Shown here one piece after another: positions 773-41,915 of a DNA stretch of 64,000 nucleotides (the stretch's first letter is position 1; each line of letters begins with the position of its first letter). The notes under the pieces are model-generated. The model was given only the letters and a program-made list of their open reading frames with translations, did no database searches and was not told where the DNA came from. Both the position numbers and the translations under genes were made by a program. Source of the stretch: Phaeosaccion multiseriatum (lineage: Eukaryota > Protista > Ochrophyta, other classes); assembly GCA_965112735.1 (NCBI GenBank), contig OZ218954.1, positions 2,418,001 through 2,482,000 on the forward strand, given 5' to 3'.

Positions 773-3043
773 ATGAGCCCTTCCGTATCAGCAGCGATAT
801 ACGACACGCCCCAATGGGCCGACCTCCGCGGCCATGTGGCCGAGGTGAAAGGCACACACCTCAGAGACCTCATGGCCGACGGAGAGCGCTGTGCGGCCTT
901 GACGGCGAGGCACGGAGACATCCTGCTGGATTACTCCAGGCAGCGAGTCACTGGCGGGACTCTGGTGAGAAAATGAAGGACTGGGAGCGTACAAAACGAG
1001 GTGTGCTCACATGATCGTTGCGTGGTACAGGACAGACTGTTTAGCCTCGCGGAGGCCGCCGGACTGGAGAAGAAGCGTGCCGACATGTTCTCTGGGCAGA
1101 AGATCAACTCCACGGAGAACCGAGCAGTGTTTCACATGGCGCTGAGGGCTCCGAGGGAGGCCACCATGTGTATCGACGGCGAGAACGTCGTCCCTTCCGT
1201 GTACGAGGTGCGCTTGTTTGCTGCGCGCGAATGACGTTCAGTCAGAGGATGCAGCTTCGACTAAACGGTTCCTCTCCTTTCCGACGCCCCCCAGACCCTG
1301 GACAAGATAAGCGACTTCGCCTCTCGCATGAGAAATGGGGAATTCACGGGTGCGACGGGAAAGCCTCTCAAGAACGTCATCTCTGTCGGGATTGGGGGCT
1401 CCTACCTCGGCCCGGAGTTCGTCTATGAGGCGCTCAGGACGGATGAGGAGGTAAGGATCGTGGGAATTGTTTTTCTGAGAGAGGTCGCTTTGTCCTGAAA
1501 CAATTGTGTCTCCCTTTGAAGGCTGCGACTGCCGCCTCAGGCCGTCGCCTGCGATTTTTGGCCAACGTCGATCCCCTCGACGTGGCGAGGGCGACAGAGG
1601 GCCTGGATCCCGAAGAGACGCTGGTGGTGGTTGTGTCCAAGACGTTTACCACCGCGGAGACGATGCTGAATGCTCGTACCCTCAAGAACTGGCTGCAGAC
1701 GAAGCTGGAGGTATGTAAGAGCCCGGAGGGCCGGAGCGAAGGCGGAGTGAGTGAGTGAGTGGGATAGGAGAGCGAGGAAGTTTGTGTGTTTTTTGTCCCT
1801 TACCCCAACTTTGAACCATTGATCGTGCAGGGTATGGCTGCTCCCGAGACCATTTCCAGGCACCACATTGTGGCGGTATCGACCAGCATAGAAAAGTGCC
1901 AGGCCTTTGGGGTGGACGCAAGCAATATATTCGGGTTCTGGGACTGGGTGGGAGGGCGCTATTCCGTCTGCTCCGCCGTCGGTGTGTTCCCTCTGGCCCT
2001 CCATTTCGGATTCGACGTGCTGGCGTCCTTCCTGGCCGGGGCCAACGACATGGATGAGCACTTCAAGGAGGCCCCCATGCGGGAAAACCTTCCCGTGCTG
2101 TTGGGGCTTCTGGGAGTGTGGAACAGCACCTTCTTGGGGTACAAGTCTCGCGCCCTGCTGCCGTACTCGCAGGCTCTGCTGCGATTCGCTGCGCATATTC
2201 AGCAGGTTTGTTTACATGGGTTCTTGCACTCATGCTGCTCTGCTCCTGCCTCTACCTTTCTCGAAGCTCTCTGACACCCCACTGCTTGCCTCCACAGGTC
2301 GACATGGAAAGTAACGGAAAGCGTGTGGCCGTGGACGGCACTGAACTCCCCTTCGACGCTGGGGAAGTGGACTTTGGTGAACCCGGCACCAATGGGCAGC
2401 ACTCGTTCTATCAACTCCTGCACCAGGGCCAGACAGTGCCAGCCGACTTTTTGGGCTTTTGCCAATCTCCTGCTCCCATCTCCATGGAGGGAGAGGCTGT
2501 CAGCAATCACGACGAGCTCATGAGCAACTTTTTTGCGCAGCCTGACGCTCTGGCCTACGGGAAAACCACGACAGAGCTGGAAGCGGAAGGAGTGCCGGAG
2601 GCACTTCGCCCTCATAAGGTACTTTTATGGACTGGAAGTTCAAAGTGGTGTCTTTGAGCGCTCTCCGCTGACCAGGCGTTTGTCTGCCTGCTGAAAATGT
2701 CTCCTCCCTTTCGAAACCACAGGTCTTTTCCGGGAACAGGCCCTCCTCTTCAATCTTGTTCTCCAAATTGAACGCCTTCAGTGTCGGCCAGCTGCTTGCC
2801 CTCTACGAGCATCGAACGGCTGTCCAAGGTTTCGTGTGGGGTCTTAACAGCTTCGATCAGTGGGGAGTGGAGCTTGGCAAGGTGTTGGCGACAAAGGTTC
2901 GCTCTCAGCTGCAGTCCTCCAGAAAGGAAGGGGCAGAGGTTTCGGGATTCAACGCATCGACCTCTGCCATGCTCCAGCACTATTTGGCTGCTGTCACGCC
3001 CGCCAAAGCCGCGGCTGAGCCCTCTATGGCAGGTGCTGTCTAA
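773..3043 (+). CDS. GPI: Glucose-6-phosphate isomerase (cytosolic type), 7 exons
   Basis: Motifs [77 protein letters not shown] and [11 protein letters not shown] across GT-AG exons. Introns at about 965-1030, 1209-1294, 1451-1521, 1711-1830, 2206-2297 and 2619-2722. Confidence 0.96.
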
Positions 3044-3088
3044 CTGAGGTGTTCATAAGATCACTGGCTTAATTACAGTTTGCGTTTC

Positions 3089-4390
3089 TTAACCTGGTCT
3101 TGTGACGTCATCTAGCACGGAAGGAAATACGTCCAAGCCTGCTGCTTGTCTACTTGCGCCATTCGCTCCCGCTCCGCGCCCGCCCTTTGTCTGGGCTTCG
3201 AGGGCTCGTATTTTGGTCCGTGTATTCTCTAGCTTCTCCTGCAGTTGGGCCTTCGCGATTCCTAGTCTCTGGCCCTCTTCTTTGATATCATACATGCGTC
3301 GTTTGGTCTGGGTTGGTAAGGGGGTGTGGAGTGCATGGGGGTGGGGGACTTGGTGATGGACATGGTGCGTAAAACGGGGGCGAAGAATCGGTCCTACCTG
3401 CAGTTGTGTCTCTTCCGACGTGTTCTTCTCTTCGCCTGGCTGCACCAGGCTCTCGCTTCGGCGAACCCACATCTCCATGGTCAGGTTCAGAACGTCGAGT
3501 CGTTCGTTCACCTAGTTGGTGATCCCAATCCGCATCGTTTCGTCAAGGTCTGAACACGCGAGAGAGGTGCAGTCTAAAGCCCCCAACTTACCGCAGCAAT
3601 GTCCTCTTCGATAGCTCGCTGTGTCTCCTGTAGCACCCCGAGACGCTGCTGGAATGGAGCGTTCATCCTGCTGCTGTTGTTGTTGTTGTTGTTGTTGTTA
3701 TTGTTGTTACTGGTCTTGTTGCTGCTATTGTTGTTCATGTTGTTCCGAGCCCCCTTGTTACCGGCACTCCCGCGAGAATACTTCACAGGGTCCCTCCTTT
3801 GCCCCATAGACGCACCCATCTGTCTCTTGACAGTAGAAGGCTCGTACTGCTCCAGCAGGTCCTGAAAATTCACCGCCGGGACGAAGTCGTCGTCATCGTC
3901 ATCGAAGCCAGCGCCGTACCAAAATAGCGCGTTGTAGAAGCCAGTGAGCCACTCAACCAAGCTCCCATTCGAGGATTTCCTTTTCTTCCTTGGTCGTACT
4001 CTCCGACTCGCGACCATGTCGTCGAAGTCCACATCCCTCCCTCTGTATCTTGCTCTAGTTTGGTCTGATACAGGCCTTCGGCTGTTGTTGCTGCGGTTCC
4101 CTTCCGCACCACTATTTCCCATGTTGCTCCTGCCCCTCTGCCTCCTGCGCCCAGCCGCGTCGCTTCGGTCTTCTTGAGGCCCGGCCCGGCCATCCTGCTC
4201 CTGCGGCGGCGGCGGTGGCGACTGCTGAGGCTTGGAACTACTACTGCTGCTGCTGGCGGCAGAATTCCGCCATCTTATTCGTCCCGCCTCACTCTGAACA
4301 ATCTCCTCTCGTCGGCTGCCGCTCCTGCTTCTCCTGCTGCCGCTCCTCTCGGCGTGTAGCTTCCCTCTTCCCCTTGGTCCCTCACCCCCA

Positions 4391-4423
<33 letters not shown>

Positions 4424-4536
4424 CCGTGCCGTCGTGTGCTCACCTGCGATCCGTATACCAGCGGGGAGAAGGCTTCACATCTGCCCATTATGCCCACAAG
4501 TAAGATAGCCACCTGAGCATTGGTCGTCCGCCCCAT
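3089..4536 (-). CDS. Hypothetical protein, probable plastid-targeted (signal peptide then CEA-F-SP), low-complexity with C-terminal coiled coil
   Basis: ORF 3574-4536 plus downstream spliced ORF 3089-3511, with GT-AG sites. No recognisable family. Confidence 0.6.
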
Positions 4537-4757
4537 TTTATCAGCTCACAGAGACCTTATCAAGCCCAATCAAACACCGATACCGCCAGCAGCGTCTGCA
4601 CGGACTAGACCTTCCCCAACCGAAAAAGACACAGTCAGCCTATTGGGGAGAGATACTCGTGTAGATTGCTTGTAGGGTCGGGGGTGGAGAGGGCCGAAGA
4701 AGCTGAAACTGTGTTGGCCTTCCAGGTGGTGTTGTTGGAGGGGAAGGGAAAAAAAAT

Positions 4758-5181
4758 ATGCGTGCCTCGCACCTGTTGATTAAACACTCCGGATCCAGGA
4801 GATGTGCGTCCTGGAAGGACCCTGAGGGAGTCGAGATCAAGCAACGGTCCAAGGTGCGTACGATAGAAAACCTTTTATTCCCCCCTTCTCCCTTGGTCTC
4901 CAACTCTTGCTCTTGTACTCTTGTTGATGCTCCTTCAGGAGCAAGCAATCTCCATGCTGCAAGATCTGAAAGCGCAGATCGGCTCGCCAGAGGACTTTGC
5001 CAAGGTGGCACAGATTAACAGCGACTGCAGCTCGGCGAACGCGGGGGGCGACTTGGGAGAGTTTGGACAGGGACAGATGCAAAAACCTTTTGAAGACGCG
5101 ACGCTCGCGCTGGCTGTGGGGGAAATATCTGGCGTTGTAGACACGGAGTCAGGAGTGCACATCATCCTGAGGACAGGCTGA
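4758..5181 (+). CDS. PIN1: Pin1-type parvulin peptidyl-prolyl isomerase without WW domain
   Basis: RASHLLIKHSGSRRCASWKDPEG ... SDCSSANAGGDLGEFGQGQMQKPFEDATLALAVGEISGVVDTESGVHIILRTG. One intron at 4854-4938. Confidence 0.9.
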
Positions 5182-5469
5182 TTTCAATTCAAACCACAAT
5201 GATATACAATCTCTATTTTTGGGACTGCTGCGCAAGGCAGTATCGCGTTAGGGGAGCTAGTACCGTTCTTCTGGGGTCGCTTCCTCTGCATGTCCATAGT
5301 TGACCTCCGAGGAGAGAGGCCCTCGTTTGCTTGAGGTCGTCTTCCCCCTTCCGCATTGTGTGAAATGAAATGAAACCCTTGTGTTCCTTCACCGGTGGTT
5401 CATTGTGCCTGGCAAGACGCGCGGCAAGTAAGATTCGAGTGTAGTTCGCATCCGCCCCGTCTCCAGTCG

Positions 5470-6550
<1,081 letters not shown>

Positions 6551-7040: not shown

Positions 7041-8267
7041 TCAGAGAAGGTCCTCTGCGGCAAGGCCAAGGCCCAAAAGGTTCCTGGGTACTCCTTGCCT
7101 TTCGCGCACCTCGCGGATGAGAGTGGAGGGATTCGAAGCCGTGCACAGACTGCGACCGAATACCACGGCGTCATATCCCACGTCCGCAAGCTCCTTGCAT
7201 TGAGACGCGCTCTCCAACCCGCCCCCGGCAAGAGTGACAACCTCGTTCGGGATGAGTCTCCTCAGACTTTTAGCTTGTTTCTCATGCAGCTGGCCCGTAA
7301 TCCTGTCCCAATTATTCACCATGATGCACTGGCAGCCATATTCAAGGACCTTCTCGCACTCCGTGGGAGTGTGCACCTGCTTGAAAATAGGAGCAACACG
7401 TGAGGCAGCAGAGACGAGCAGAAGATAGGCACACTTAGTCGGGGCTCTTCTTAAACACCCGGTATGGACATCAGCCCCGAACGCGTACACAGACACACAC
7501 ACACACACAAGCCACTTGACCAGATGACTTGCCTCGACGATGGACTCGATCCCCACTGTGGTGCACACGCTCATGATGTCTTCCAAGAGGGGGCCCAGAA
7601 CACACGCCAGCAAGACTACTCCAGAGGCGCCGTGCTCTGCCGCAAGAGCTATCTGCATGGGGTGCAGAATGATATCCTTCATGACAACAGGTGGGGCGTC
7701 TGTGCGGCCGACTGCCTTGACCACGTCGTCGAGGTCCTCCATGCTCCCTCCGTAGCTCGAAAAGTCAGTGTTGACAAAGAGTGCGTCCGCTCCTGCCCGG
7801 ACCAAAGACTTGCCTACCCTACCCGGGTCCTGAAAAGAAACGACTTCCCTGGGAAGCTGCTTAGCTGTAGGAGAGCGCCGCTTGATGTCCGCCACCACCG
7901 CCAGCTGGTGCGCGTCTGCCAAGTCCGTACTGCGCCGCAGAGCTCGCCGCAAGCGGTAGGAGCTCTCCTCCGCCACATACTCGAGCCTCATCTTCACATC
8001 CATATTGTCGACATCATCGAGGGTGCTGCTGAGGCGGTCAACTTCCTGCTGCTTGCGGTACACGGTGGCCATGAGGTCGTTCCACTGCTGCGCTTTCAAT
8101 CTCGCTTGCCCTTCTCCACCGCAAGGCCTCACGCGCTTCTTCCCCGGCGAGCCTCCGCATCTTTGCTTCGCACCTCCCCGCAGTAAAGAGGACTGCTTCA
8201 CTGAGGGGGGGGGTGGAACAAAGCACAAAGTCGGGCAGAAAAGAGCCGCGAAAAGAAGACAACGCAT
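7041..8267 (-). CDS. Indole-3-glycerol phosphate synthase-like TIM-barrel protein, plastid-targeted, divergent active site
   Basis: VVADIKRRSP, YGGSMEDL, PVVMKDIILHPMQIALAAEHGASGVVL, IVE-VHT, VNN and GYDAVVFG. Signal peptide then LC-F-VP. In-frame GC-AG intron at 7377-7532. Confidence 0.85.
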   Translation of the reverse strand: MRCLLFAALFCPTLCFVPPPPSVKQSSLLRGGAKQRCGGSPGKKRVRPCGGEGQARLKAQQWNDLMATVYRKQQEVDRLSSTLDDVDNMDVKMRLEYVAEESSYRLRRALRRSTDLADAHQLAVVADIKRRSPTAKQLPREVVSFQDPGRVGKSLVRAGADALFVNTDFSSYGGSMEDLDDVVKAVGRTDAPPVVMKDIILHPMQIALAAEHGASGVVLLACVLGPLLEDIMSVCTTVGIESIVEASHLVKWLVCVCVSVYAFGADVHTGCLRRAPTKCAYLLLVSAASRVAPIFKQVHTPTECEKVLEYGCQCIMVNNWDRITGQLHEKQAKSLRRLIPNEVVTLAGGGLESASQCKELADVGYDAVVFGRSLCTASNPSTLIREVRERQGVPRNLLGLGLAAEDLL

Positions 8268-23548: not shown

Positions 23549-25737
23549 CTACAAGGTTCGTACAACAAGCCCCGAACTCAACTTGGGTTCAAACCAAGTT
23601 GCTTTGGGGCTCATCAGCTCTTCGGCGTCTGCGATGGCCATGACCTCCTCTATCGATACGGGGTACATGGCGAAGGCCACCGCCCACTGCGCAGGCTCGC
23701 TGGCATCCACGGACACCAGAGACTGCAGCTCCTTGGATCCGCGTATCCCGCCCACTGGTGGAAGATATTGTTGAAAGGAAAAAAGAGTGTGTAAGAGGAG
23801 GACAGGAACAGAGGGCACGAAGCAGGTGTAGGGTAACAACGAGGGCGCAGTACTCACCATATTTTATGCGTTCATCTGTCCGGGGATTCCCAACATTCAA
23901 AATGGGATGCAGTAGCTTGTCGTACAGGACCTGCACATCCAGGCTGTTCACAGGATGGTAGGGACCGACATGTTCCGGCCGCAATGTGAGGCGGTACCAC
24001 TTTCCCCGTAGACACATTCCCATCTGTCCTTTCCGGGGGGGCTCCGGCTGGTCGTGCTCCTCAAGTTCCTCGCACTCAAAAACAAGGCGGACGCGTTCTA
24101 AAAACAGCTCCTCTGGTAAGTTGTTGAGGTCCCGCACGACGCGATTGTACTCCATGATTTTCAATTGCGAGGAGGGAAAGAGTACTGCCAAGAAGAAGTT
24201 GAAAGGTTCCTCCCCTGTCACCACGTCCCCCCTGGCAATGGCTTCCTTGATTTTCATTTCACCAACTCGAAAGGCAGACGCGCTGCGGTGATGACCGTCG
24301 GCAATGTAAGAGCAAGGCACAGCTTCAAAGGCTTTGCAGAGTTCGCTTACGGCGTGGGGCTCCAGCACAGGCCACACAAAGTGCTTGATGCCATCATCGG
24401 CAGTCAGGGAGGTGGACGGTGGCTGGCTGTGGGGAGAGGAGCGAGGAGCGGAGCGAAACAGGCCAAAGTCAATGACATGGAAACGCGGTGCCCACCAAGG
24501 TCCAATCCAAGGTCGAATCACAGAGAAGCACCAGCCACCAAACATCCACAGGGTGCGACTATGGGTCGTATTCTAACGCTGCTTCCTCCCTCACCTAGTG
24601 ATGGACGAGATGATGGAGTCGACTGTCGCAGCATCTCTGTATGTGAGAAACACAGGGCCGGCGTTTGCATTCTGCACGTACGTCAGCCGCGTCCGATCAT
24701 TCTCTTTCTTCACTTGCGTTTTTTCATGGCGTTTAATAATACCCATGGCATAGTCCTCCACAGGTACACCTGCGACCAGGGGCCAAACGTAAAAAGGATG
24801 GTGAGAATACCAAAAAAAAAAGGGAGAAAAGGATTGAGCTGACCTGCGCAAACGCCGTACTGTATGTGGTCCCCCATTTGCTGCGCGTACACATATATAC
24901 CCGGTGTGTCGTCGTAGACGAGCCACCTGTTTTTGGTGGGGAGAGGTGACTTCGTCAAGAGGCCCAAAAATCAAGCATTGTCAAAAACGTCAGCCTTGCG
25001 CTCTCCCTCCCTCCCGAACTCACTGCTTTTGGATAAACTCCTGGAGGTTCAACTTTCCCATTTCGTATACACGCTCATCGTACTGTGAAATATCGACCGG
25101 CAAATCTATTTCAGGCTTGATAACCTAGAGAGGAGGGGGGGGGGTGAGGGGAGAGACAGGGAGAGAAGAGGGAGGGAGAGGGATAGAAAGACACACATAT
25201 GAGAGCGGACGGACGAGGACAAGGGTGGAGAGGGAGGAGACCGATGGGTGGAGCGGAGTGGCAGGGTAGGGACCAAGAGTGGACAGAATCGGCCCATGAA
25301 GGTAGCAAACAAGACGAAGGGGAGAAGAGGAGAGGAGAGGAGCGAAGGAGGAGGAGGAGGAGGAGGAGGAGAATAGCATTGGAGGAGGAGGAGGAGGAGG
25401 AGGAGGAGGAGGAGGAGGACGAGGACGAGGAGCATCAGTAGGAGGAGGAGGAAGAGGAAGAGGAGAAACAGCAGCAGCAGGAGGAGGGGGGAGGGAGGAG
25501 GAGGAGGAGGGAGGGAGGGGAGGAGATCATGAGATCATGACACAGGAAGGGCACACTTCTCCGCCGCAGATAATACGGGCCTGCTGCTCTACTCACCCTG
25601 AGGAAGGTCTTCTCCCCTCTCTCCTGGTAAATGTCTCTAGCCTCCTTTGAGTCCAGCACATCATAGGGAGGAGAGGCAACAGCCTCCGCGAGTCCAGGCC
25701 CTGGACGCAAAGCTCGGAACGGCTTTAACCTCACCAT
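23549..25737 (-). CDS. DUF1015 family protein (bacterial-type, ParB/Srx-like ADGHHR motif), multi-exon
   Basis: PFRALRP...ASPPYDV, IKRHEKT...KENDR, NAGPVFLTY, YIADGHHRSASA, YNRVVRDLN, SLDVQVL, PRTDERI..VGGIRG and MSPKATWFEPKLSSGL. Confidence 0.88.
25130..25525. repeat. Purine-rich (GGA)n low-complexity tract inside DUF1015 intron 1 (25125-25596)
   Basis: Direct inspection. Confidence 0.85.
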
Positions 25738-26022
25738 GCCCGGCCTTGGGCACACCAATCAGGCCCTGCTACTCCTGCTACTCCTGCTACTCCTGCTGCT
25801 GCTGTGCTGGTGCTGCCTGAAGTAGCTTATACTATCTAAGAGAAAAAAAAATGGTATGGGTGGGACAGCCCCCCGGGAAAGGCGTATGCCTCCACTTTGT
25901 GTATTACAACGCGGGAGACACCGACAAAAGAGACCCAGGTTTGCACACAGCTGTAGAGAGATTGCAGAGAGCCTGCAGCAGCAGCGCCGCAGTAACAGCA
26001 GGCGCCGCGACTCTTGCCGACT

Positions 26023-29000
26023 ATGGCAAGCTTCAAGTATGCTCCCGTGTCCACGGTACGAGAAATAAGCAAAAGCAAAAATCCTTTTCGTTGTTCCTTC
26101 CCTCACCCGCCCTGTTGCGCCACACACTCTCTCCCCCCATGATCAGGAGGAAGGGGCAGCAGGCAAACCCTCGTCCTCTGGGTCTGCTTCCAATGGACCA
26201 GGGGCCGGCTACGATGAAGACAGCGACACGATCATGACGAAACGAATGCCTTACTGTCTTGGCATGTTGGTGTTGTTGGCCATCATTTACGTGCTCAGCC
26301 GGACGGAGAGTAGTGAAGCGTGTCCACCCTGCGCCCCGCAGTCATCCTCTCCTTTGCGCGAAGCATGCCCACCTGCGACAGCGTGCCCGTCAGTCCAGCC
26401 CCCTCCAGCGGCCGCAGCAGCAGCAGCCCCGCCGAGCGAGTTTGATATCGGGGCGTATCGGCGCGAGCGCCTTGCCCAGACGCCTCCTCACATCATCGAA
26501 TGTGCAAAGGCTGAAGAGGGCGCTTCGCAGGACGCCTGCCATCTGCCACGAAGTACGCGCTATGCTGCTGTGGGGCAGAAGGGGGCTACGCTGTGGATGA
26601 CGGGTCTGTCGGGATCAGGAAAGAGCACCATTGCCATGGCCTTGGAGGAAGAGTTGGTCAGGCAGGGCAAGCACGTGTACCGTCTGGATGGCGATAACAT
26701 CCGCACTGGGCTAAATAGGGACCTCGGCTTTTCAGCAGACGATCGTGACGAGTCTGTGCGCCGAGTGGGGGAGCTTGCCTGTCTTTTCTCTGACTCTGGT
26801 GTCATTACTCTCGTGAGCTTGGTGAGCCCTTACCGCGAGGCAAGAGACGCGGTGCGGAAGCGACATGAGGAGCAGGGTATTCCCTTCTTTGAGACGTTTA
26901 TGGATGTGCCTCTTGAGACGGTGCAGTCTCGCGATCCGAAGGGGCTTTACGCCAAGGTGGAGGCGGGGGAGTTGAAGGGATTCACAGGTGTCGATGCGCC
27001 CTACGAAGCTCCCCTGAATGCAGAGATTGTGCTGCCCAACCGTGACATGACAATTGAGCAGTGTGTCGCCTCTTTATTGCGGACTCTGGAGGCGAATGGC
27101 ATTCTTTCTGGCGGTGACAGAGACTCGACGAAGCTGCCCATGCCGGATGGGGATGAGATTGTTGATCTCCACGTTGCTCCAGGAGACAAGGTGGGGAGGA
27201 TTGCAGAAGCGGCTACGCTGCCCAAGGTTCTGCTCAGCGACATTGACCTCAACTGGCTGCAGACCGTGGGAGAGGGATGGGCGAGCCCGCTCAAGGGATT
27301 CATGCGAGAAGGTGTCCTGCTGCAGACTCTCCATTTCAACTCGTACCTCGTGGACCCGCACAATGTGACGGCCAACTATGGCTTCAACGAGAAGACGACA
27401 GACTTTACGAAGATGCCAGTGACTCGGCCCCCTTCCAGGGTGTCCATGTCAGTGCCCATTGTGTTGCCCTGCACCGACTTCACCAAGGCCTCCATCGAGG
27501 GGAGCGGAAAGGAGGCCGTGGCTTTAGTCAACAAGGGGGGAGATACCGTGGCAATCTTGCGAAACCCCGAGGTTTACGCAAATCGAAAGGAGGAAATTGT
27601 GACGCGGCTGTTTGGTGTGATTGATCCTGGTCACCCTTACATTGCGCACATTTACAGCGGTGGAGACTGGCTTATTGGAGGGGAGGTGGAGCTTCTAGAC
27701 AGAATACGGTACAACGATGGGCTTGATCAGTGGCGACTTACGGCGAGGGAGGTCAGAGAGGAATTTGCCAAGAAGGGAGCTGATGTGGTGTATGCCTTTC
27801 AAACCAGAAACCCCACGCACGCTGGACACGCCTACCTCATGCGCACGGCGGGGGAGATGCTGAAGGACCAGGGCTACAAGCGCCCCGTCCTTTGGCTGTC
27901 ACCGCTCGGGGGCTGGACTAAAGAGGATGACGTGCCGCTGGATGTTCGAGTCAAGCAGCACGAAGCCGTCCTCCAGGAAGGCATGCTCGATCCGTCGTCC
28001 ACTGTCATGGCCATTTGGCCTAGTCCAATGATTTACGGGGGGCCGACAGAAGTGCAGTTTCACGCCAAGTCTCGCCGCAGTGGTGGGGCTAGTTTCTTTG
28101 TCGTGGGACGTGATCCAGCCGGTATGAAGGGAAGCGGCCTGGCCGAGGCGCATCCAGATGACGATCTCTACGACCCTCAACACGGGCGCTTCGTCTTGGC
28201 AATGTCCCCTGGTGTGGGTGACATGAAGATGCTCGACTTTCAGCAGGTGTACTACGACACGACGACCCACACCATGACGGCCAAGGACCCTTCCCGCCCC
28301 GACGATTTCATTTCCATTTCTGGCAGCAAAATGCGAGCCCTCGCCGCCCAAGGGGCACGTCCTTGCCCTTCTGAGATTCCGCTGGACCTTTTGGCTGCCA
28401 ACTGCATTCCTCCTGGCTTCATGGTGGACTCCGGGTGGGACATTGTTTGCGACTATTACCAGAACATTGACACCAAGACTTGGGTGCCGTACAGCCAGAC
28501 GGTGAAGGACCCCATTGTTGCATCGTATGCGAGCGTGAACCCGGGCACGGCCTTCGGCACGAGCGAGTTTGCCCTCCTTCTCAAGGACCCCACTTCTGGT
28601 TCAACCATCAGCCCGTGGCACGACATTCCTCTGCAGTCGTCAAGCGAGCAGGGCATGTACAACTTTGTGGTGGAGATTCCAATGTACCAGACTGCCAAGA
28701 TGGAAGTGGCAAAAGACATTGCGGGTAATCCCATTATGCAAGACGAGAGCAATGGAAAGCCCCGGTACTACCACTACGGCGTGCCCTTCTTCAATTACGG
28801 CCTTCTTCCGCAGACCTGGGAGGACCCCAATGTGAAGGACAGCGCAGGGCACGGAGGTGACAACGATCCCATCGACGTGATTGAGATTGGAGTTGACCCT
28901 CTACCCATGGGCACTGTCACCCCCGTCAAGGTGCTGGGGTCTCTCGAGCTCATTGACGAGGGAGAGACGGACTTCAAAATCATTGCCATCCGAACTTCGG

Positions 29001-29266
29001 ACCCCCTGGCCGCCAAGCTTCGAAACATGCAGGACGTGGAGCAGCACAAGCCGGGCACACTGGCCAGCATTGTTGATTGGCTCAAGAACTACAAGACAGC
29101 TGAGGGGAAAGGCGTCAACATATTGGCATCTGAAACCCCTTCTTCAAGCGAGGAGGCGGAGCAAGTCATTGGGCAGACGCACGAGCGTTGGCAGCAGCTC
29201 ACCGCCGGACAAGCCACGCATGATTCCTCGTTCTGGTTGGGGGCCAACGCCGACCACCCCTGGTGA
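26023..29266 (+). CDS. APS kinase - ATP sulfurylase - inorganic pyrophosphatase triple fusion (PAPS synthase) with N-terminal membrane anchor
   Basis: APSK GLSGSGKST and LDGDNIR. ATPS QTRNPTHAGH and VGRDPAG. PPase SPWHDIPL, NYGLLPQTWEDP, GDNDPIDV and DEGETDFK. Inferred exon 1 26023-26055 (MASFKYAPVST) and intron 26056-26146 are in frame with ORF 26234-29266. Confidence 0.95.
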
Positions 29267-29635
29267 AGAAGTGAAGCATGGCCCCTTTCTTGGAGAGGGG
29301 GTTCGCAGAGCATGGTGCATGCCACTTCCAGGCCTCCCCCCGTGAGGTTGTGATGCTGCCAGGCAGGGCAGCAGGGCGCAGGGCATGTGGAACAACAGTT
29401 GACCACACGAACCCTCCACCTGCACCACCACCACAGCCCAGCCGCCGCCGCCGCCGCTACTGCTGATGGAGAGTTGCGGCGGGTGAGCGAATCGCAATTT
29501 GAGAAGGGGTAGTGGTATGACTCGGTGAATCCGGCATTCTTGAATACAGAAGCGAAACAGCTTTAGTCATCATCTCTCACATACTCCAGAAGCATCACCT
29601 GCTAGTGTCCGCTTCTCCTCTAGTCTTCGTCTCGC

Positions 29636-36607: not shown

Positions 36608-39600
36608 GAGGGAGGGAGGGAGGGAGGGAGGGAGGGAGGGAGGGAGGGAGGGAGGGAGGGAGGGAGGGAGGGAGGGAGGGAGGGAGGGAGGGAGGGAGGG
36701 AGGGCGGGAGGGAGGGAGGGAGGGAGGGAGGGAGGGAGGGAGGGAGGGAGGGAGGGAGGGAGGGAGGGAGGGAGGGAGGGAGGGAGGGAGGGAGGGAGGG
36801 AGGGAGGGAGGGAGGGAGGGAGAGAGGAAGGCAGGGAAGGAGGGAGGGAGGCAGGGAGGGGGGGATGGAGGGAGGGACGGAGGGAGGGAGAAGCAAAGAA
36901 GGGGAGGGAGGGAGGGAGGGAGGGAGGGAGGGAGGGAGGGAGGGAGGGAGGGAGGGAGGGAGGGAGGGAGGGAGGGAGGGAGGGAGGGAGGGAGGGAGGG
37001 AGGGAGGGAGGGAGGGAGGGAGGGAGGGAGGGAGGGAGGGAGGGAGGGAGGGAGGGAAGGAGGGAGGGAGGGAGGGAGAGAGAGCGGGAGGGTGGGAGGA
37101 AGGGAGAGATGAAGGGAGGGAAGGAAGGTGGGTCGGAGGGAGGGAGGGAGGGAGGGAGGGAGGGAGGGAGGGAGGGAGGGAGGGAGGGAGGGAGGGAGGG
37201 AGGGAGGGAGGGAGGGAGGGAGGGAGGGAGGGAGGGAGGGAGGGAGGGAGGGAGGGAGGGAGGGAGGGAGGGAGGGGCGGAGGGGGCGAGAGAGGGAGGG
37301 AGGGTGGAAGGGAGGGAGGGAGGGATGGAGGGAGGGAGGGAGGGAGGGAGGGAGGGAGGGAGGGAGGGAGGGGGGGAGGTGGGGAGGGAGGGAGGGAGAG
37401 ATGGAGGGAGGGAGGGAGGGAGGGAGGGAGGGAGGGGGGGATGGAGGGAGGGAGGAAGAGAGGGAGGGAGGGAGGGAGGGAGGGAGGGAGGGAGGGAGGG
37501 AAGGAGGGAGGGAGGGAGGAAGGGTGGGAGAGAGGGAGGGGAGAGGGAGGGAAGGGAGACAGAGAGGGAGGGAGGGAGGCAAGGGGGGAGAGAGGAAGGG
37601 AGGGGAGAGAGAGAGGGAGGGAGGGAGGAAGGGAGGGGAGGGAGAAGAGAGGAAGGCAGGGAGGGAGGGAGGGAGGGAGGGAGGGGGGGATGGAGGGAGG
37701 GAGGAAGAGAGGGAGGGAGGGAGGGAGGGAGGGAGGGAGGGAGGGAGGGAAGGAGGGAGGGAGGGAGGAAGGGTGGGAGAGAGGGAGGGGAGAGGGAGGG
37801 AAGGGAGACAGAGAGGGAGGGAGGGAGGCAAGGGGGGAGAGAGGAAGGGAGGGGAGAGAGAGAGGGAGGGAGGGAGGAAGGGAGGGGAGGGAGAAGAGAG
37901 GAAGGCAGGGAAGGAGGGAGGGAGGCAGGGAGGGGGGGATGGAGGGAGGGACGGAGGGAGGGAGGGAGGGAGGGAGGGAGGGAGGGAGGGAGGGAGGGAG
38001 GGAGGGAGGGAGGGAGGGAGGGAGGGAGGGAGGGAGGGAGGGAGGGAGGGAGGGAGGGAGGGAGGGAGGGAGGGAGGGAGGGAGGGAGGGAGGGAGGGAG
38101 GGAGGGAGGGAGGGAGGGAGGGAGAGAGAGAGGGAGGGAGGGAGGGAGGGAGAGAGGAAGGGAGGGAAGGAAGGTGGGTCGGAGGGAGGGAGGGAGGGAG
38201 GGAGGGAGGGAGGGAGGGAGGGAGGGAGGGAGGGAGGGAGGGAGGGAGGGAGGGAGGGAGGGAGGGAGGGAGGGAGGGAGGGAGGGAGGGAGGGAGGGAG
38301 GGAGGGAGGGAGGGAGGGAGGGAGGGAGGGAGGGAGGGAGGGAGGGAGGGAGGGAGGGAGGGAGGGAGGGAGGGAGGGAGGGAGGGAGGGAGGGAGGGAG
38401 GGAGGGAGGGAGGGAGGGAGGGAGGGAGGGAGGGAGGGAGGGAGGGAGGGAGGGAGGGAGGGAGGGAGGGAGGGAGGGAGGGAGGGAGGGAGGGAGGGAG
38501 GGAGGGAGGGAGGGAGGGAGGGAGGGAGGGAGGGAGGGAGGGAGGGAGGGAGGGAGGGAGGGAGGGAGGGAGGGAGGGAGGGAGGGAGGGAGGGAGGGAG
38601 GGAGGGAGGGAGGGAGGGAGGGAGGGAGGGAGGGAGGGAGGGAGGGAGGGAGGGAGGGAGGGAGGGAGGGAGGGAGGGAGGGAGGGAGGGAGGGAGGGAG
38701 GGAGGGAGGGAGGGAGGGAGGGAAGGGAGGGAGGGAGGGAGGGAGGGAGGGAGAGGGAGGGAGAGAGGGAGGGAAGGGAGGGAGAGAGGGAGGGAGGGAG
38801 GAAGGGAGGGAGGGAGGAAGGGAGGGAGGGAGAGAGAGGGGGAGGGAGGGAGGGAGGGAGGGAGAGAGGGAGAAAGGGAGGGAGAGAGGGAGAGAGGGAG
38901 GGAGGGAGGGAGGGAGGGAGGGAGGGAGGGAGGGAGGGAGGGAGGGAGGGAGGGAGGGAGGGAGGGAGGGAGGGAGGGAGGGAGGGAGGGAGGGAGGGAG
39001 GGAGGGAGGGAGGGAGGGAGGGAGGGAGGGAGGGAGGGAGGGAGGGAGGGAGGGAGGGAGGGAGGGAGGGAGGGAGGGAGGGAGGGAGGGAGGGAGGGAG
39101 GGAGGGAGGGAGGGAGGGAGGGAGGGAGGGAGGGAGGGAGGGAGGGAGGGAGGGAGGGAGGGAGGGAGGGGAGGGAGGGAGGGAGGGAGGGAGGGAGGGA
39201 GGGAGGGAGGGAGGGAGGGAGGGAGGGAGGGAGGGAGGGAGGGAGGGAGGGAGGGAGGGAGGGAGGGAGGGAGGGAGGGAGGGAGGGAGGGAGGGAGGGA
39301 GGGAGGGAGGGAGGGAGGGAGGGAGGGAGGGAGGGAGGGAGGGAGGGAGGGAGGGAGGGAGGGAGGGAGGGAGGGAGGGAGGGAGGGAGGGAGGGAGGGA
39401 GGGAGGGAGGGAGGGAGGGAGGGAGGGAGGGAGGGAGGGAGGGAGGGAGGGAGGGAGGGAGGGAGGGAGGGAGGGAGGGAGGGAGGGAGGGAGGGAGGGA
39501 GGGAGGGAGGGAGGGAGGGAGGGAGGGAGGGAGGGAGGGAGGGAGGGAGGGAGGGAGGGAGGGAGGGAGGGAGGGAGGGAGGGAGGGAGGGAGGGAGGGA

Positions 39601-41334
39601 GGGAGGGAGGGAGGGAGGGAGGGAGGGAGGGAGGGAGGGAGGGAGGGAGGGAGGGAGGGAGGGAGGGAGGGAGGGAGGGAGGGAGGGAGGGAGGGAGGGA
39701 GGGAGGGAGGGAGGGAGGGAGGGAGGGAGGGAGGGAGGGAGGGAGGGAGGGAGGGAGGGAGGGAGGGAGGGAGGGAGGGAGGGAGGGAAGGGAGGGAGAG
39801 AGGGAGGGAGAGAGGGAGGGAAGGGAGGGAGGGAGGGAGGGAGGGAGGGAGGGAGGGAGGAGAGGAAGGGAGGGAGAGAGAGGGAGGGAGGGAGGGAGGG
39901 AGGGAGGGAGGGAGGGAGGGAGGGAGGGAGGGAGGGAGGGAGGGAGGGAGGGAGGGAGGGAGGGAGGGAGGGAGGGAGGGAGGGAGGGAGGGAGGGAGGG
40001 AGGGAGGGAGGGAGGGAGGGAGGGAGGGAGGGAGGGAGGGAGGGAGGGAGGGAGGGAGGGAGGGAGGGAGGGAGGGAGGGAGGGAGGGAGGGAGGGAGGG
40101 AGGGAGGGAGGGAGGGAGGGAGGGAGGGAGGGAGGGAGGGAGGGAGGGAGGGAGGGAGGGAGGGAGGGAGGGAGGGAGGGAGGGAGGGAGGGAGGGAGGG
40201 AGGGAGGGAGGGAGGGAGGGAGGGAGGGAGGGAGGGAGGGAGGGAGGGAGGGAGGGAGGGAGGGAGGGAGGGAGGGAGGGAGGGAGGGAGGGAGGGAGGG
40301 AGGGAGGGAGGGAGGGAGGGAGGGAGGGAGGGAGGGAGGGAGGGAGGGAGGGAGGGAGGGAGGGAGGGAGGGAGGGAGGGAGGGAGGGAGGGAGGGAGGG
40401 AGGGAGGGAGGGAGGGAGGGAGGGAGGGAGGGAGGGAGGGAGGGAGGGAGGGAGGGAGGGAGGGAGGGAGGGAGGGAGGGAGGGAGGGAGGGAGGGAGGG
40501 AGGGAGGGAGGGAGGGAGGGAGGGAGGGAGGGAGGGAGGGAGGGAGGGAGGGAGGGAGGGAGGGAGGGAGGGAGGGAGGGAGGGAGGGAGGGAGGGAGGG
40601 AGGGAGGGAGGGAGGGAGGGAGGGAGGGAGGGAGGGAGGGAGGGAGGGAGGGAGGGAGGGAGGGAGGGAGGGAGGGAGGGAGGGAGGGAGGGAGGGAGGG
40701 AGGGAGGGAGGGAGGGAGGGAGGGAGGGAGGGAGGGAGGGAGGGAGGGAGGGAGGGAGGGAGGGAGGGAGGGAGGGAGGGAGGGAGGGAGGGAGGGAGGG
40801 AGGGAGGGAGGGAGGGAGGGAGGGAGGGAGGGAGGGAGGGAGGGAGGGAGGGAGGGAGGGAGGGAGGGAGGGAGGGAGGGAGGGAGGGAGGGAGGGAGGG
40901 AGGGAGGGAGGGAGGGAGGGAGGGAGGGAGGGAGGGAGGGAGGGAGGGAGGGAGGGAGGGAGGGAGGGAGGGAGGGAGGGAGGGAGGGAGGGAGGGAGGG
41001 AGGGAGGGAGGGAGGGAGGGAGGGAGGGAGGGAGGGAGGGAGGGAGGGAGGGAGGGAGGGAGGGAGGGAGGGAGGGAGGGAGGGAGGGAGGGAGGGAGGG
41101 AGGGAGGGAGGGAGGGAGGGAGGGAGGGAGGGAGGGAGGGAGGGAGGGAAGGGCGGGAGGGAGGGAAGGGCGGGAGGGAGGGTTTTAGGGACGGAGGGTT
41201 TTAGGGACGGAGGGAGGGAGAGAGGGAGGGAGAGAGGGGGGGAGGGAGGGAGGGAGGGAGGGAGGGAGGGAGGGAGGGAGGGAGGGAGGGAGGGAGGGAG
41301 GGAGGGAGGGAGGGAGGGAGGGAAGAAGGGAAGG
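36608..41334. repeat. (GGGA)n tetranucleotide array, about 4.7 kb
   Basis: Mostly perfect GGGA repeats with degenerate blocks and an internal duplication of about 249 bp (37441 vs 37690). Confidence 0.98.
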
Positions 41335-41915
41335 AGTGTTAGCCTCTGGGCCAAGGGCAGTGACGACCCTCGCCGGAAAAGCTCTCAGTATCTTTCTAGC
41401 TGGCTATCGCTCACTCGAAGATCTCTGATATATGCGTACGGACTGACCAATGGAGTGGTACCTTTTTCTTACATTGCTATTGTCCAATACTACCCACCTC
41501 GATGATGTTCTTGTCCTTACGCGTACCCCAATGTCCTTTATGCCTTTGTCCTTATCTCCTTTTTTGCTTACTACACGGCCTTGTCACTGACCCGATAACC
41601 TCCCTCCGGAACTCCGGAATCTAGACCAAAATAGACCTTCTCGATGCCAAATGTCGATGTCCTGCCCATACCCGAAGTCAATGAAAGTCCCCCCCGGGAG
41701 GCCCCAAATTCAAAGAACAAAAACCGATCACTTTGCCGTTGTATCATTGGCGTGTGTCAGAAGAAGAAAGAATGAAAGAAGGTATGAAGGCCGCCGCGGA
41801 CAGAGCCCGGCTGGGGAAGGCTGGGGGAGGGCAGACGCACATGAGGGAAGAAAGCAGGAAGGGAGAGTAGGGAGCAGGGAGAGACTGACACCGAAAGATA
41901 CCGGGGGGGATGGGG

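What the first reader, a model, noticed from the sequence alone, without database searches (positions are those of the whole stretch)
26023..26560. PAPS synthase triple fusion with type II membrane topology: possible PAPS synthesis inside the Golgi lumen
Seen: a short upstream exon (ATG 26023, MASFKYAPVST, donor ACG|GTACGA, acceptor ATCAG at 26146, in frame) adds a hydrophilic N-tail of about 45 aa containing YAPV. It is followed by KR, a hydrophobic segment (YCLGMLVLLAIIYVLS) and a Cys/Pro-rich stem (CPPCAP...CPPATACP...PPP), then APSK-ATPS-PPase. Established: the triple fusion occurs in stramenopiles and haptophytes. PAPS synthases are normally soluble and PAPS is imported into the Golgi by transporters. 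A tail-TM-stem layout is typical of Golgi glycosyl- and sulfotransferases, and YxxPhi is an adaptor sorting motif. Inference: the whole sulfate-activation line, including PPi removal, may face the secretory lumen and feed sulfated-polysaccharide synthesis directly.
Basis: partly seen in the sequence, partly recalled or inferred. Interest (0 to 1): 0.75.

Follow-up and report, generated by a model that had tools for sequence, protein, structure and literature searches.

The report
Membrane-anchored, probably lumen-facing PAPS synthase
This alga's enzyme for making PAPS, the universal sulfate donor, carries a conserved sorting tail and membrane anchor, and sequence statistics across about 150 relatives suggest it works inside the secretory pathway rather than in the cytosol, as has been assumed.

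Summary
One gene (26023-29266, +) encodes an APS kinase / ATP sulfurylase / pyrophosphatase fusion. An 11-codon first exon and a 91-nt intron precede it. No RNA reads could be had. The exon is supported by a conserved N-terminal motif and by an intron at the same codon in Ectocarpus and in a diatom.

The tail-anchor-stem layout is not peculiar to this genome. It is present in essentially all complete orthologues examined: ochrophytes, oomycetes, a diplonemid and chlorarachniophytes. It is absent from animal-type PAPS synthases. The papers I could search call the enzyme cytosolic, or plastidial on the basis of truncated gene models.

Several signals favour catalytic domains that face the lumen:
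- an invariant YxxPhi motif plus acidic cluster in the tail;
- a clear positive-inside bias in oomycetes;
- a 5-10-fold shortage of N-glycosylation sequons only C-terminal of the anchor in ochrophytes, with controls near 1;
- one conserved sequon in an exposed inserted loop;
- an invariant Cys-bounded loop found only in anchored forms.

Against this, net flank charge in diatoms points the other way, and there is no experimental evidence. Golgi residence is inference. I call it a new variant of a known enzyme family. It is of high interest and directly testable.

The parts
26023..26055 (+). Coding exon 1, 11 codons (MASFKYAPVST). It carries the invariant N-terminal Y-x-x-Phi motif (Y6-A-P-V9).
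   Evidence: The motif is conserved in 80 ochrophyte and 24 oomycete orthologues. An 11-codon first exon is also annotated in Ectocarpus and Mayamaea.
26056..26146 (+). Predicted phase-0 intron of 91 nt: GTACGA...pyrimidine tract...CAG. An acceptor at 26149 is also possible.
   Evidence: The sequence has in-frame stops if left unspliced. The intron position is conserved in a brown alga and a diatom. No RNA evidence could be obtained.
26147..26245 (+). Rest of the hydrophilic N-tail (33 aa). It holds an acidic cluster YDEDSDT and then a dibasic KR next to the anchor.
   Evidence: Orthologues have the same acidic cluster followed by K/R-K/R. The region is disordered in the AlphaFold2 model.
26246..26299 (+). 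Signal-anchor transmembrane segment, 18 aa, conserved in sequence (C-x-G-x-x-V-L-x-A-I-V-Y-V-L-[SA]-R in ochrophytes).
   Evidence: Kyte-Doolittle score 2.35. Column conservation is 90-100%. It is predicted as a helix with pLDDT 72-82.
26300..26440 (+). Stem of 47 aa, rich in Cys, Pro, Ser and Ala, with CPPCAP and CPPATACP. It varies in length and sequence among orthologues.
   Evidence: pLDDT is below 50. In ochrophyte stems the sequon O/E is 0.32, against 0.92 for the reversed triplet.
26441..26578 (+). Conserved extension before the APS kinase domain (FDIGAYR...PPHIIEC...CHLPR), with the ochrophyte-invariant pair C90/C102 (ORF numbering; nt 26501-26539).
   Evidence: the Cys columns are 100% conserved in ochrophytes.
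26579..27034 (+). APS kinase domain. The P-loop GLSGSGKST and the DGDN motif are intact.
   Evidence: Pfam PF01583, E = 2.4e-63. Motifs checked.
27143..27700 (+). PUA-like domain of ATP sulfurylase. It contains a ~30-aa insertion relative to human PAPSS1 (27350-27439), which holds the only sequon of the protein (N377-V-T, nt 27362-27370).
   Evidence: Pfam PF14306. The insertion is unaligned to 1X6V. The sequon is conserved in 97% of ochrophytes and 24/24 oomycetes and is absent from metazoan-type proteins. The loop has pLDDT 53-62.
27728..28366 (+). ATP sulfurylase catalytic domain. The QTRNPTHAGH and GRDPAG motifs are intact.
   Evidence: Pfam PF01747, E = 5.4e-54. Motifs checked.
28364..28405 (+). 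Cys-bounded loop insertion (C711...C724, CPSEIPLDLLAANC).
   Evidence: Both Cys are invariant in 114/114 ochrophyte, 12/12 oomycete and 8/8 other anchored proteins. The whole loop is missing in human PAPSS1 and in two metazoan-type proteins, P0141 and P0345.
28664..29194 (+). Family I inorganic pyrophosphatase domain. The DNDPIDV and EIPMY motifs are intact.
   Evidence: Pfam PF00719, E = 2.2e-37. Motifs checked.
29264..29266 (+). Stop codon. There is no KDEL-like C-terminus (the protein ends ...ANADHPW).
   Evidence: A metatranscriptome contig identical to 29227-29409 spans the stop codon and the sequence just downstream.

Best explanation
The gene encodes a single-pass membrane protein of the secretory pathway.

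[quoted passage not shown] All catalytic motifs are intact.

Inferred, in order of confidence:
1. The hydrophobic segment is an uncleaved signal anchor.
2. It inserts N-in/C-out (type II). The tail then stays in the cytosol, where its invariant Y-x-x-Phi motif, acidic cluster and membrane-proximal dibasic pair act as sorting signals. The stem and all three enzymes face the lumen.
3. The steady-state compartment is post-ER, most likely Golgi/TGN.
4. There the enzyme makes PAPS from lumenal ATP and sulfate, next to the sulfotransferases that use it. The fused pyrophosphatase pulls the unfavourable sulfurylase step in a compartment that presumably lacks a soluble pyrophosphatase.
5. The stem cysteines (CPxCP) and the Cys-bounded loops form disulfides that stabilise the dimer.

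The same design is shared by ochrophytes, oomycetes, a diplonemid and chlorarachniophytes.
For: **The layout is conserved.**
- 105 of the 120 best homologues plus the window protein have the ochrophyte-type anchor. 65 in the first count, and 80 once later fetches were added, have both the N-motif and the anchor. The tail median is 37-38 aa and the TM is 16-18 aa.
- Oomycetes (24 sequences), Diplonema papillatum, Amorphochlora, Partenskyella, pelagophytes and a dictyochophyte have a tail plus TM too.
- Metazoan-type PAPSS has none.

**The tail carries sorting-type signals.** Tyr and the Phi residue at +3 are present in 100% of the sequences examined (they anchor the motif search), and the acidic residues 6-7 positions after the Tyr are strongly conserved. 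K/R-K/R sits next to the TM.

**Positive-inside rule.**
- Oomycetes have a median of 4 K+R on the N-flank and 1 on the C-flank, net C-N charge -3.
- Ochrophytes have K+R 3 versus 1.

**Sequons (NxS/T) in ochrophytes.**
- O/E is 1.31 in the tail, 0.32 in the stem, 0.16 before the APS kinase domain and 0.36 in the catalytic part. About four fifths of the catalytic-part sequons are one conserved site. The reversed triplet stays at 0.92-1.10 everywhere.
- Sporadic sequons number 33 in 20 alignment columns, against 194 in 62 for the reversed triplet.
- The shortage holds in non-redundant sets: 11 versus 43 columns, p = 1.4e-5, and 3 versus 19, p = 8.6e-4.
- It holds in every domain bin once the one conserved sequon is set aside.
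- Oomycete orthologues show no such bias (19 versus 17 columns), but their stems carry sequons (18 observed, 9.9 expected).

**Features found only in anchored forms.**
- The one conserved sequon sits in a low-confidence loop inserted relative to human PAPSS1.
- The invariant Cys-x(11-17)-Cys loop is present only in anchored forms.

**It is not a plastid presequence.** The anchor starts at residue 45 and has no aromatic residue after it. The IGPS gene in the same window shows a textbook presequence, MRCLLFAALFCPTLC|FVPP.

**Possible demand for sulfation.** First-reader notes on this genome, not checked here, list many glycosyltransferase-sulfotransferase fusion genes.
Against: - Net charge difference (C minus N, 15-aa flanks) is +1 at the median in ochrophytes and +2 to +8 in many diatoms, because of the acidic cluster. 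Taken alone, by the classical charge-difference rule, this predicts N-out/C-in.
- No experiment on topology, localisation or glycosylation was found.
- The P. tricornutum N-glycoproteome lists the orthologue only at a non-sequon Asn, in a dataset that also lists mitochondrial non-sequon sites. That gives no support.
- The intron is not confirmed by RNA.
- Sequon shortage is confined to plastid-bearing lineages. A cause linked to complex plastids cannot be excluded.
- I could not obtain a control family: the IGPS search gave only 8 hits.
- Partly conserved unpaired cysteines (C183, C413 and C739 in ORF numbering) are unusual for an oxidising lumen unless they are buried.
- A lumenal pathway needs ATP import, sulfate import and phosphate export. 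None of these was examined.
- One unnamed lineage (P0334/P0346) has the anchor but no Pfam-detectable pyrophosphatase.
Confidence: 0.55

Rival explanations
1. Cytosol-facing tether. The segment inserts N-out/C-in (type III). The short tail is then lumenal, and the three enzymes sit on the cytosolic face of an ER, Golgi or other membrane, for example beside a PAPS or sulfate transporter, making PAPS locally in the cytosol.
For: - Net flank charge in ochrophytes is neutral to N-negative and strongly so in diatoms.
- The tail is short, acidic and disordered, so it could be translocated.
- The literature assumes a cytosolic enzyme.
- The highly conserved TM could be a docking helix for a transporter.
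- ATP and sulfate supply would then be no problem.
Against: - It does not explain the 5-10-fold sequon shortage restricted to the C-terminal side.
- It does not explain the conserved sequon or the Cys-bounded loops specific to anchored forms.
- It does not explain an invariant YxxPhi plus acidic cluster at the very N-terminus, which would then be lumenal.
- Oomycete orthologues have 4 K/R before and about 1 after the TM.
Confidence: 0.17
2. Cleavable or bipartite targeting signal. The hydrophobic segment acts as a signal peptide and the stem as a transit-peptide-like region. In ochrophytes the enzyme then passes through the ER lumen to the periplastidial compartment or plastid, or is released as a soluble lumenal or secreted enzyme.
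For: - Patron et al. 2008 read the T. pseudonana model this way.
- Sequon shortage is seen only in plastid-bearing lineages, and transit through the ER would expose the protein to the glycosylation machinery.
- Small residues follow the TM (A-R-A|G in chrysophytes).
- Diatom stems are Ser/Thr/Ala-rich.
Against: - The hydrophobic segment lies 29-89 residues from the N-terminus, behind a conserved tail that would be discarded.
- No aromatic residue or Leu follows it, unlike the true presequence of IGPS in this window.
- Stems contain acidic residues, CPxCP motifs or coiled coils.
- The same layout exists in oomycetes and Diplonema, which have no plastid.
Confidence: 0.1
3. Lumen-facing, but resident in the ER or chloroplast-ER rather than the Golgi. 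In ochrophytes it would supply PAPS or APS to the space around the plastid rather than to Golgi sulfotransferases.
For: - The very short TM (16-18 aa) fits early compartments.
- A diatom transporter study notes that no plastid APS kinase is known and that PAPS must be imported across the chloroplast ER.
- Sequon shortage is confined to plastid-bearing groups.
Against: - There is no di-arginine signal at the N-terminus and no KDEL-type signal at the C-terminus.
- YxxPhi plus an acidic cluster is a post-Golgi/TGN type of signal.
- The layout is conserved in plastid-less oomycetes.
- The genome is noted to be rich in secretory sulfotransferase fusions (not checked here).
Confidence: 0.1

Closest known systems
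Stramenopile/haptophyte APS kinase-ATP sulfurylase-pyrophosphatase triple fusion (Patron et al. 2008, PMC2275785; Bradley et al. 2009, as cited in PMC4220642)
   Same: It has the same three enzymes in the same order. It is 64-72% identical to named members from Ectocarpus and Nannochloropsis.
   Different: The papers I could search describe the family as cytosolic, or as plastid-targeted in T. pseudonana. They do not mention a conserved tail, an anchor or a first mini-exon. Here the anchor proves to be a family-wide feature.
Human bifunctional PAPS synthase PAPSS1 (PDB 1X6V)
   Same: The APS kinase and ATP sulfurylase parts align over their whole length, E = 3e-165.
   Different: The human enzyme is soluble. 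It has no tail or TM, no pyrophosphatase, no sequon-bearing insertion (ORF 373-402) and no Cys-bounded loop (ORF 711-724).
Type II Golgi enzymes of sulfation: carbohydrate and tyrosylprotein sulfotransferases, and the Golgi PAP phosphatase BPNT2/gPAPP (PMC8551643, listed)
   Same: The overall anatomy is shared: a short N-terminal tail, one signal-anchor helix, a flexible stem and a large catalytic part.
   Different: Those enzymes use PAPS or clear away PAP. In animals PAPS itself is made in the cytosol and imported by SLC35B2/B3. A PAPS-making enzyme with this anatomy did not turn up in the searched literature. Its topology is not experimentally known.
Entamoeba mitosomal sulfate activation (PMC4621310, PMC9796589; listed)
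   Same: It is a precedent for moving ATP sulfurylase, APS kinase and an inorganic pyrophosphatase together into a closed compartment, so that the compartment carries its own pyrophosphatase (recalled from the field; only titles and abstract openings were read here).
   Different: There the three are separate soluble proteins in a mitochondrion-related organelle. They are not one anchored polypeptide in the secretory pathway.
TGN-type cytosolic sorting tails: furin (PMC2120164) and the type II asialoglycoprotein receptor H1 with a Tyr near the N-terminus (PMC2199941); both listed
   Same: A tyrosine-based Y-x-x-Phi motif is combined with an acidic cluster in a short cytosolic tail, near the N-terminus in a type II protein (recalled from the field; the papers were only listed, not read).
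   Different: The resemblance is one of motif only. No adaptor binding or trafficking was tested for this protein or in these organisms.

Membership tests
APSK-ATPS-PPase triple-fusion PAPS synthase | APS_kinase, PUA_2, ATP-sulfurylase and Pyrophosphatase domains in this order on one polypeptide | tested here: met
   Pfam E-values are 2.4e-63, 1e-31, 5.4e-54 and 2.2e-37.
APSK-ATPS-PPase triple-fusion PAPS synthase | Catalytic motifs of all three enzymes are intact | tested here: met
   GLSGSGKST, DGDN, QTRNPTHAGH, GRDPAG, DNDPIDV and EIPMY are all present.
APSK-ATPS-PPase triple-fusion PAPS synthase | Full-length similarity to named members | tested here: met
   Identity over 97-100% of the length is 70% to Ectocarpus and 63-64% to Nannochloropsis (one entry is named 'aps kinase atp sulfurlyase pyrophosphatase fusion protein').
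APSK-ATPS-PPase triple-fusion PAPS synthase | PAPS synthesis and PPi hydrolysis activity | not testable with these tools
   This needs an enzyme assay.
Type II (signal-anchor) secretory-pathway enzyme | One hydrophobic helix near, but not at, the N-terminus, and no other TM | tested here: met
   The 18-aa segment starts at residue 45. It is a helix in the AlphaFold2 model.
Type II (signal-anchor) secretory-pathway enzyme | Flank charges place the N-terminus in the cytosol | tested here: inconclusive
   In ochrophytes K+R is 3 versus 1, but the net C-N charge is +1. In oomycete orthologues K+R is 4 versus 1 and the net is -3.
Type II (signal-anchor) secretory-pathway enzyme | Flexible stem between the anchor and the catalytic part | tested here: met
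   pLDDT is below 50 over model residues 54-96. The distance from TM to P-loop ranges from 68 to 179 aa and the sequence varies.
Type II (signal-anchor) secretory-pathway enzyme | Catalytic part is exposed to the lumen | tested here: inconclusive
   The evidence is indirect only: a sequon shortage on the C-terminal side, a conserved sequon, and Cys-bounded loops. There is no experimental evidence, and the glycoproteome entry is uninformative.
Type II (signal-anchor) secretory-pathway enzyme | Golgi residence | not testable with these tools
   This needs microscopy or fractionation.
Ochrophyte bipartite plastid presequence (ASAFAP type) | Signal peptide at the extreme N-terminus | tested here: not met
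   The hydrophobic segment begins after a conserved tail of 44 aa here and 29-89 aa in orthologues.
Ochrophyte bipartite plastid presequence (ASAFAP type) | Aromatic residue or Leu directly after the signal-peptide cleavage site | tested here: not met
   The sequence here is ...YVLS|RTE, and 98% of orthologues have Arg after [SA]. IGPS in this window has ...TLC|FVPP.
Metazoan-type bifunctional PAPS synthase (PAPSS1/2) | Soluble two-domain protein without an anchor or a pyrophosphatase | tested here: not met
   An anchor and a PPase domain are both present. The human enzyme lacks both, and lacks two insertions as well.

The most novel reading that the evidence does not exclude
In a large slice of eukaryotic diversity (diatoms, brown algae and other ochrophytes, oomycetes, diplonemids and chlorarachniophytes), PAPS is made inside the secretory lumen. 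The enzyme is a self-contained, membrane-anchored APS kinase-ATP sulfurylase-pyrophosphatase. Golgi sulfation there would run on imported ATP and sulfate rather than on imported PAPS. The pyrophosphatase fusion would exist because the lumen has no pyrophosphatase of its own.
Probability: 0.45. Interest if true: 0.9.

Novelty: new variant of a known kind. Interest (0 to 1): 0.78.

Why it matters
Textbook sulfation biology places PAPS synthesis in the cytosol (or plastid) and brings PAPS into the Golgi through SLC35B-type transporters.

If this family faces the lumen, several things follow:
- The organisms that make much of the ocean's sulfated polysaccharide (diatoms, brown algae), and important plant and animal pathogens (oomycetes), organise the pathway differently.
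- The long-puzzling pyrophosphatase fusion gets a rationale.
- Lumenal ATP, sulfate and phosphate transport become necessary parts of sulfation.
- The unresolved 'cytosol or plastid' question for the diatom enzyme gets a third answer.

The work also gives a practical warning. The first coding exon is only 11 codons, and many gene models in the databases appear to miss it. This makes the anchor look like an N-terminal signal peptide.

The hypothesis can be tested at once in transformable species such as Phaeodactylum, Nannochloropsis and Phytophthora.

Tried and rejected
- **RNA evidence for the intron.** It also returned one metatranscriptome with an exact 211-nt contig whose 183 laid bases lie at 29227-29409, so nothing bears on 26056-26146.
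- **Positive-inside rule on ochrophytes alone.** This was ambiguous: K+R favours N-in and net charge favours N-out. It became informative only when oomycetes were added.
- **Control family for the sequon statistics.** The plastid-targeted IGPS of this window gave only 8 homologues, too few for statistics. All three word-index searches are now used.
- **Experimental glycosylation.**
  - The P. tricornutum N-glycoproteome supplement lists the orthologue (B7FXQ3) at N721 in ...DTN-SDG.... This is not a sequon, and the table also holds non-sequon sites in mitochondrial proteins. I rejected it as evidence.
  - The stored file was cut, so absence of the conserved site means nothing.
- **Other literature look-ups.** The ASAFind 2.0 supplements do not hold the P. 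tricornutum gene id. A literature search by gene id gave only noise.
- **Literature searches for a membrane-bound or lumenal PAPS synthase** found none. The searched library lacks most subscription journals, so absence is not proof. Bradley et al. 2009 could not be read.
- **Strict co-occurrence of anchor and pyrophosphatase.** This is nearly true but not strictly so. P0334/P0346 are anchored without a Pfam PPase hit. P0137 and P0150 are truncated models.
- **Disulfide geometry.** The structure tool returns no coordinates, so Cys-Cys distances could not be measured.
Full report
**What is in the window.**
- The + strand holds a 1010-aa ORF (26234-29266). Pfam splits it into APS kinase (aa 116-267), the PUA-like domain (304-489), the ATP sulfurylase catalytic domain (499-711) and a family I inorganic pyrophosphatase (811-987). 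The catalytic motifs of all three enzymes are intact.
- The ORF frame stays open upstream of its first ATG back to about 26066 and holds no start codon there.
- An ATG at 26023 opens an 11-codon exon (MASFKYAPVST). A GT follows at 26056. A pyrimidine tract and CAG end at 26146, and the next base continues the ORF frame.
- The spliced product has a 44-aa hydrophilic tail (6 acidic and 4 basic residues, ending in KR). An 18-aa hydrophobic segment follows, then a 47-aa stem with CPPCAP and CPPATACP, a conserved 46-aa extension, and the three enzymes.

**Is exon 1 real?**
- Read-level evidence could not be had. The single run search found only genomic contigs of the source organism, colinear across 25600-29409 without joints. 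It also found a metatranscriptome with one exact contig over 29227-29409.
- Comparative evidence is strong.
  - The strict motif [YWF]-x-Y-[AS]-P-[LVI] occurs twice in the six-frame translation of the whole window. One occurrence is here, directly behind an ATG.
  - Eighty ochrophyte orthologues with complete N-termini begin with [Y/W/F]-x-Y-[A/S]-P-[L/V]-x-x-[D/E]-[D/E], and Tyr is residue 6 in 72 of them.
  - The annotated Ectocarpus gene has a first coding exon of exactly 11 codons (MAVYKYAPVAQ, then gtatgg and a 3.5-kb intron).
  - The diatom Mayamaea has the same arrangement (MAKYAYAPLSV, then gtgagt and a 148-nt intron). Nannochloropsis lacks this intron.
Only the choice between acceptors 26146 and 26149 stays open.
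- Many database models start at the Met just before the hydrophobic segment (for example P0003, P0100, P0105, P0110). That appears to be the result of missing this mini-exon, and it makes the anchor look like an N-terminal signal peptide.

**The layout belongs to the family, not to this gene.**
- Of the 120 best homologues plus the window protein, 105 carry the same hydrophobic segment. Its sequence is conserved: Cys 91%, Gly 94%, then V-L-x-A-I-V-Y-V-L-[SA]-R at 81-100%. Most of the rest are visibly truncated models.
- In 65 full-length sequences the tail is 29-89 aa (median 37) and the TM is 16-18 aa. The distance from TM to P-loop is 68-179 aa and the sequence there varies.
- A search of 1.8 billion cluster representatives, followed by name look-ups, showed a tail plus TM in further groups:
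  - oomycetes (Lagenidium, Pythium, Peronospora, Plasmopara, Bremia, Aphanomyces, Saprolegnia, Achlya, Thraustotheca);
  - Diplonema papillatum;
  - the chlorarachniophytes Amorphochlora and Partenskyella;
  - pelagophytes and a dictyochophyte.
- Oomycetes keep the same N-terminal signature (Y-A-S-V-x-Q-D-D, Tyr 100%) although their TM sequence differs.
- Animal-type two-domain PAPS synthases have neither tail nor TM.

**What the literature says.**
- Patron et al. 2008 listed the Phytophthora enzyme as cytosolic. [quoted passage not shown]
- Prioretti et al. 2014 call the diatom/haptophyte fusion cytosolic and state that the T. pseudonana localisation is unresolved.
- Eight further full-text searches found no report of a membrane-anchored or lumenal PAPS synthase. 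The searched library is incomplete.

**Which way does it face? Charges.**
- In ochrophytes the 15-aa flanks hold a median of 3 K/R before the TM and 1 after it.
- The conserved acidic cluster makes the net C-minus-N difference +1 at the median, and up to +8 in diatoms. By the charge-difference rule this would favour N-out.
- In oomycetes the flanks are 4 versus 1 and the net is -3, a clear N-in signal.
- Charges alone do not settle the question.

**Which way does it face? Glycosylation sequons.** I compared N-x-S/T counts with composition-preserving shuffles and with control triplets.
- In 80 full-length ochrophyte proteins:
  - the tail has 31 sequons against 23.7 expected (O/E 1.31);
  - the stem has 12 against 37.5 (0.32);
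  - the pre-kinase extension has 1 against 6.4 (0.16);
  - the catalytic part has 99 against 274 (0.36), and about four fifths of those 99 are one conserved site;
  - the reversed triplet S/T-x-N stays at 0.92-1.10 in all four regions.
- On the alignment, sporadic sequons number 33 in 20 columns. The controls give 194 in 62 columns (reversed), 192 in 55 (N-x-D/E) and 162 in 62 (N-x-A/G).
- The shortage holds in every domain bin once the one conserved sequon is set aside.
- It holds after thinning to under 80% identity (11 versus 43 columns, p = 1.4e-5) and to under 70% identity (3 versus 19, p = 8.6e-4).
- It holds in pelagophytes and dictyochophytes, which have 0-1 sequons.
- Oomycete orthologues show no such bias (19 versus 17 columns). 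Their stems carry sequons (18 observed, 9.9 expected) and their tails almost none.
- I know of no reason for a cytosolic protein to avoid N-x-S/T. An asymmetry that flips at the TM is what one expects if everything behind the TM meets the oligosaccharyltransferase.
- Caveats:
  - The shortage is confined to plastid-bearing lineages.
  - I could not get a control family.

**Which way does it face? Features found only in anchored forms.**
- The single conserved sequon (N-[LIV]-T; N377 of the ORF) is present in 97% of ochrophytes and 24/24 oomycetes and is absent elsewhere.
- It lies in a ~30-aa insertion relative to human PAPSS1. AlphaFold2 models this insertion as a low-confidence loop, pLDDT 53-62.
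- Near the end of the sulfurylase domain all anchored proteins have a loop bounded by two invariant cysteines (C711 and C724 here). This includes 114 ochrophyte, 12 oomycete and 8 other proteins, Diplonema among them. Human PAPSS1 and two metazoan-type proteins (P0141, P0345) lack the whole loop.
- Ochrophytes add an invariant C-x11-C pair before the kinase domain.
- Stems often hold CPxCP motifs, mucin-like Ser/Thr/Pro runs or, in pelagophytes, coiled coils.
- These features fit disulfide-stabilised, dimeric lumenal stalks. They are not proof.

**What it is not.**
- It is not a plastid presequence. The hydrophobic segment sits behind a conserved tail and is followed by [SA]-R, not by an aromatic residue. 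The layout also exists in plastid-less groups.
- The IGPS gene of this same window (7044-8267, minus strand) shows what a real ochrophyte presequence looks like: MRCLLFAALFCPTLC|FVPP.

**Model.**
- The AlphaFold2 run on a 53-sequence alignment gave mean pLDDT 81 and pTM 0.71. The tail is disordered, a 27-residue helix covers the anchor, the stem is disordered, and the enzyme domains are confident.
- My best reading, at about 55% confidence, is a type II signal-anchored protein.
  - Its cytosolic tail sorts it to a post-ER compartment through the tyrosine motif, the acidic cluster and the dibasic pair.
  - Its lumenal part makes PAPS on site, with the fused pyrophosphatase pulling the sulfurylase step.
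- The main rival (about 17%) is a cytosol-facing tether.
- Smaller rivals are a cleaved or bipartite signal, and an ER/chloroplast-ER rather than Golgi residence.
- First-reader notes on this genome list many glycosyltransferase-sulfotransferase fusion genes. I did not check them. If correct, they imply a heavy demand for lumenal PAPS.

**Verdict.**
- The gene is an ordinary member of the known triple-fusion family.
- The conserved tail-anchor-stem module, the overlooked mini-exon and the sequence evidence for lumenal exposure are, as far as I could search, undescribed. They are directly testable.

Noticed in passing
window 36608-41336: A 4.7-kb tetranucleotide microsatellite of about 1180 copies (TRF consensus unit GAGG; it reads as GGGA repeats). 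It makes the + strand almost pure purine, with GC skew and AT skew both near 1. It also produces spurious ORFs of more than 1500 aa in several frames.
   Followed up: partly
window 25435-25758 (-) and 23592-24545 (-): A DUF1015-family gene lies head to head with the PAPS synthase gene. Its apparent start, near 25758, is only about 265 bp from the PAPS synthase ATG at 26023, so the two genes probably share a divergent promoter region.
   Followed up: partly
window 7044-8267 (-): An indole-3-glycerol-phosphate synthase gene has a textbook ochrophyte bipartite plastid presequence (MRCLLFAALFCPTLC|FVPP) and what looks like an in-frame retained intron. Its closest homologues are brown algal, at only 42-44% identity, and only 8 homologues were found in all.
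   Followed up: partly
P0128 (Amorphochlora amoebiformis) and P0129: These anchored relatives have a degenerate APS kinase P-loop (VTARDVQKAH in place of GLSGSGKST). P0128 also gives only weak Pfam hits for the kinase and the pyrophosphatase. They may be regulatory or pseudo-enzyme domains, as in fungal ATP sulfurylase.
   Followed up: partly
P0334 / P0346 (unnamed lineage): This is an anchored APS kinase-ATP sulfurylase with a Cys-rich and coiled-coil stem. It has no Pfam-detectable pyrophosphatase, although P0346 has about 290 further residues after the sulfurylase domain.
   Followed up: no
L001 (Ectocarpus) 3034-6519 versus window 26056-26146: The conserved first intron is 3.5 kb in Ectocarpus, 148 nt in the diatom Mayamaea and 91 nt here. 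Nannochloropsis has lost it and has a different intron inside the TM-coding region.
   Followed up: partly
window 25100-25530: A low-complexity GA/CT-rich stretch gives poly-Glu, poly-Leu and poly-Pro pseudo-ORFs on both strands upstream of the gene pair.
   Followed up: no
window 29227-29409: A metatranscriptome run (coded X1) holds a contig identical to the end of this gene's coding sequence and the sequence just downstream. The organism, or a near-identical strain, therefore occurs in that environmental sample.
   Followed up: no
PMC8678454, supplementary table: The published P. tricornutum 'N-glycoproteome' lists many Asn sites that are not in N-x-S/T sequons, some of them in mitochondrial enzymes. 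Part of the table probably reflects chemical deamidation rather than glycosylation.
   Followed up: partly
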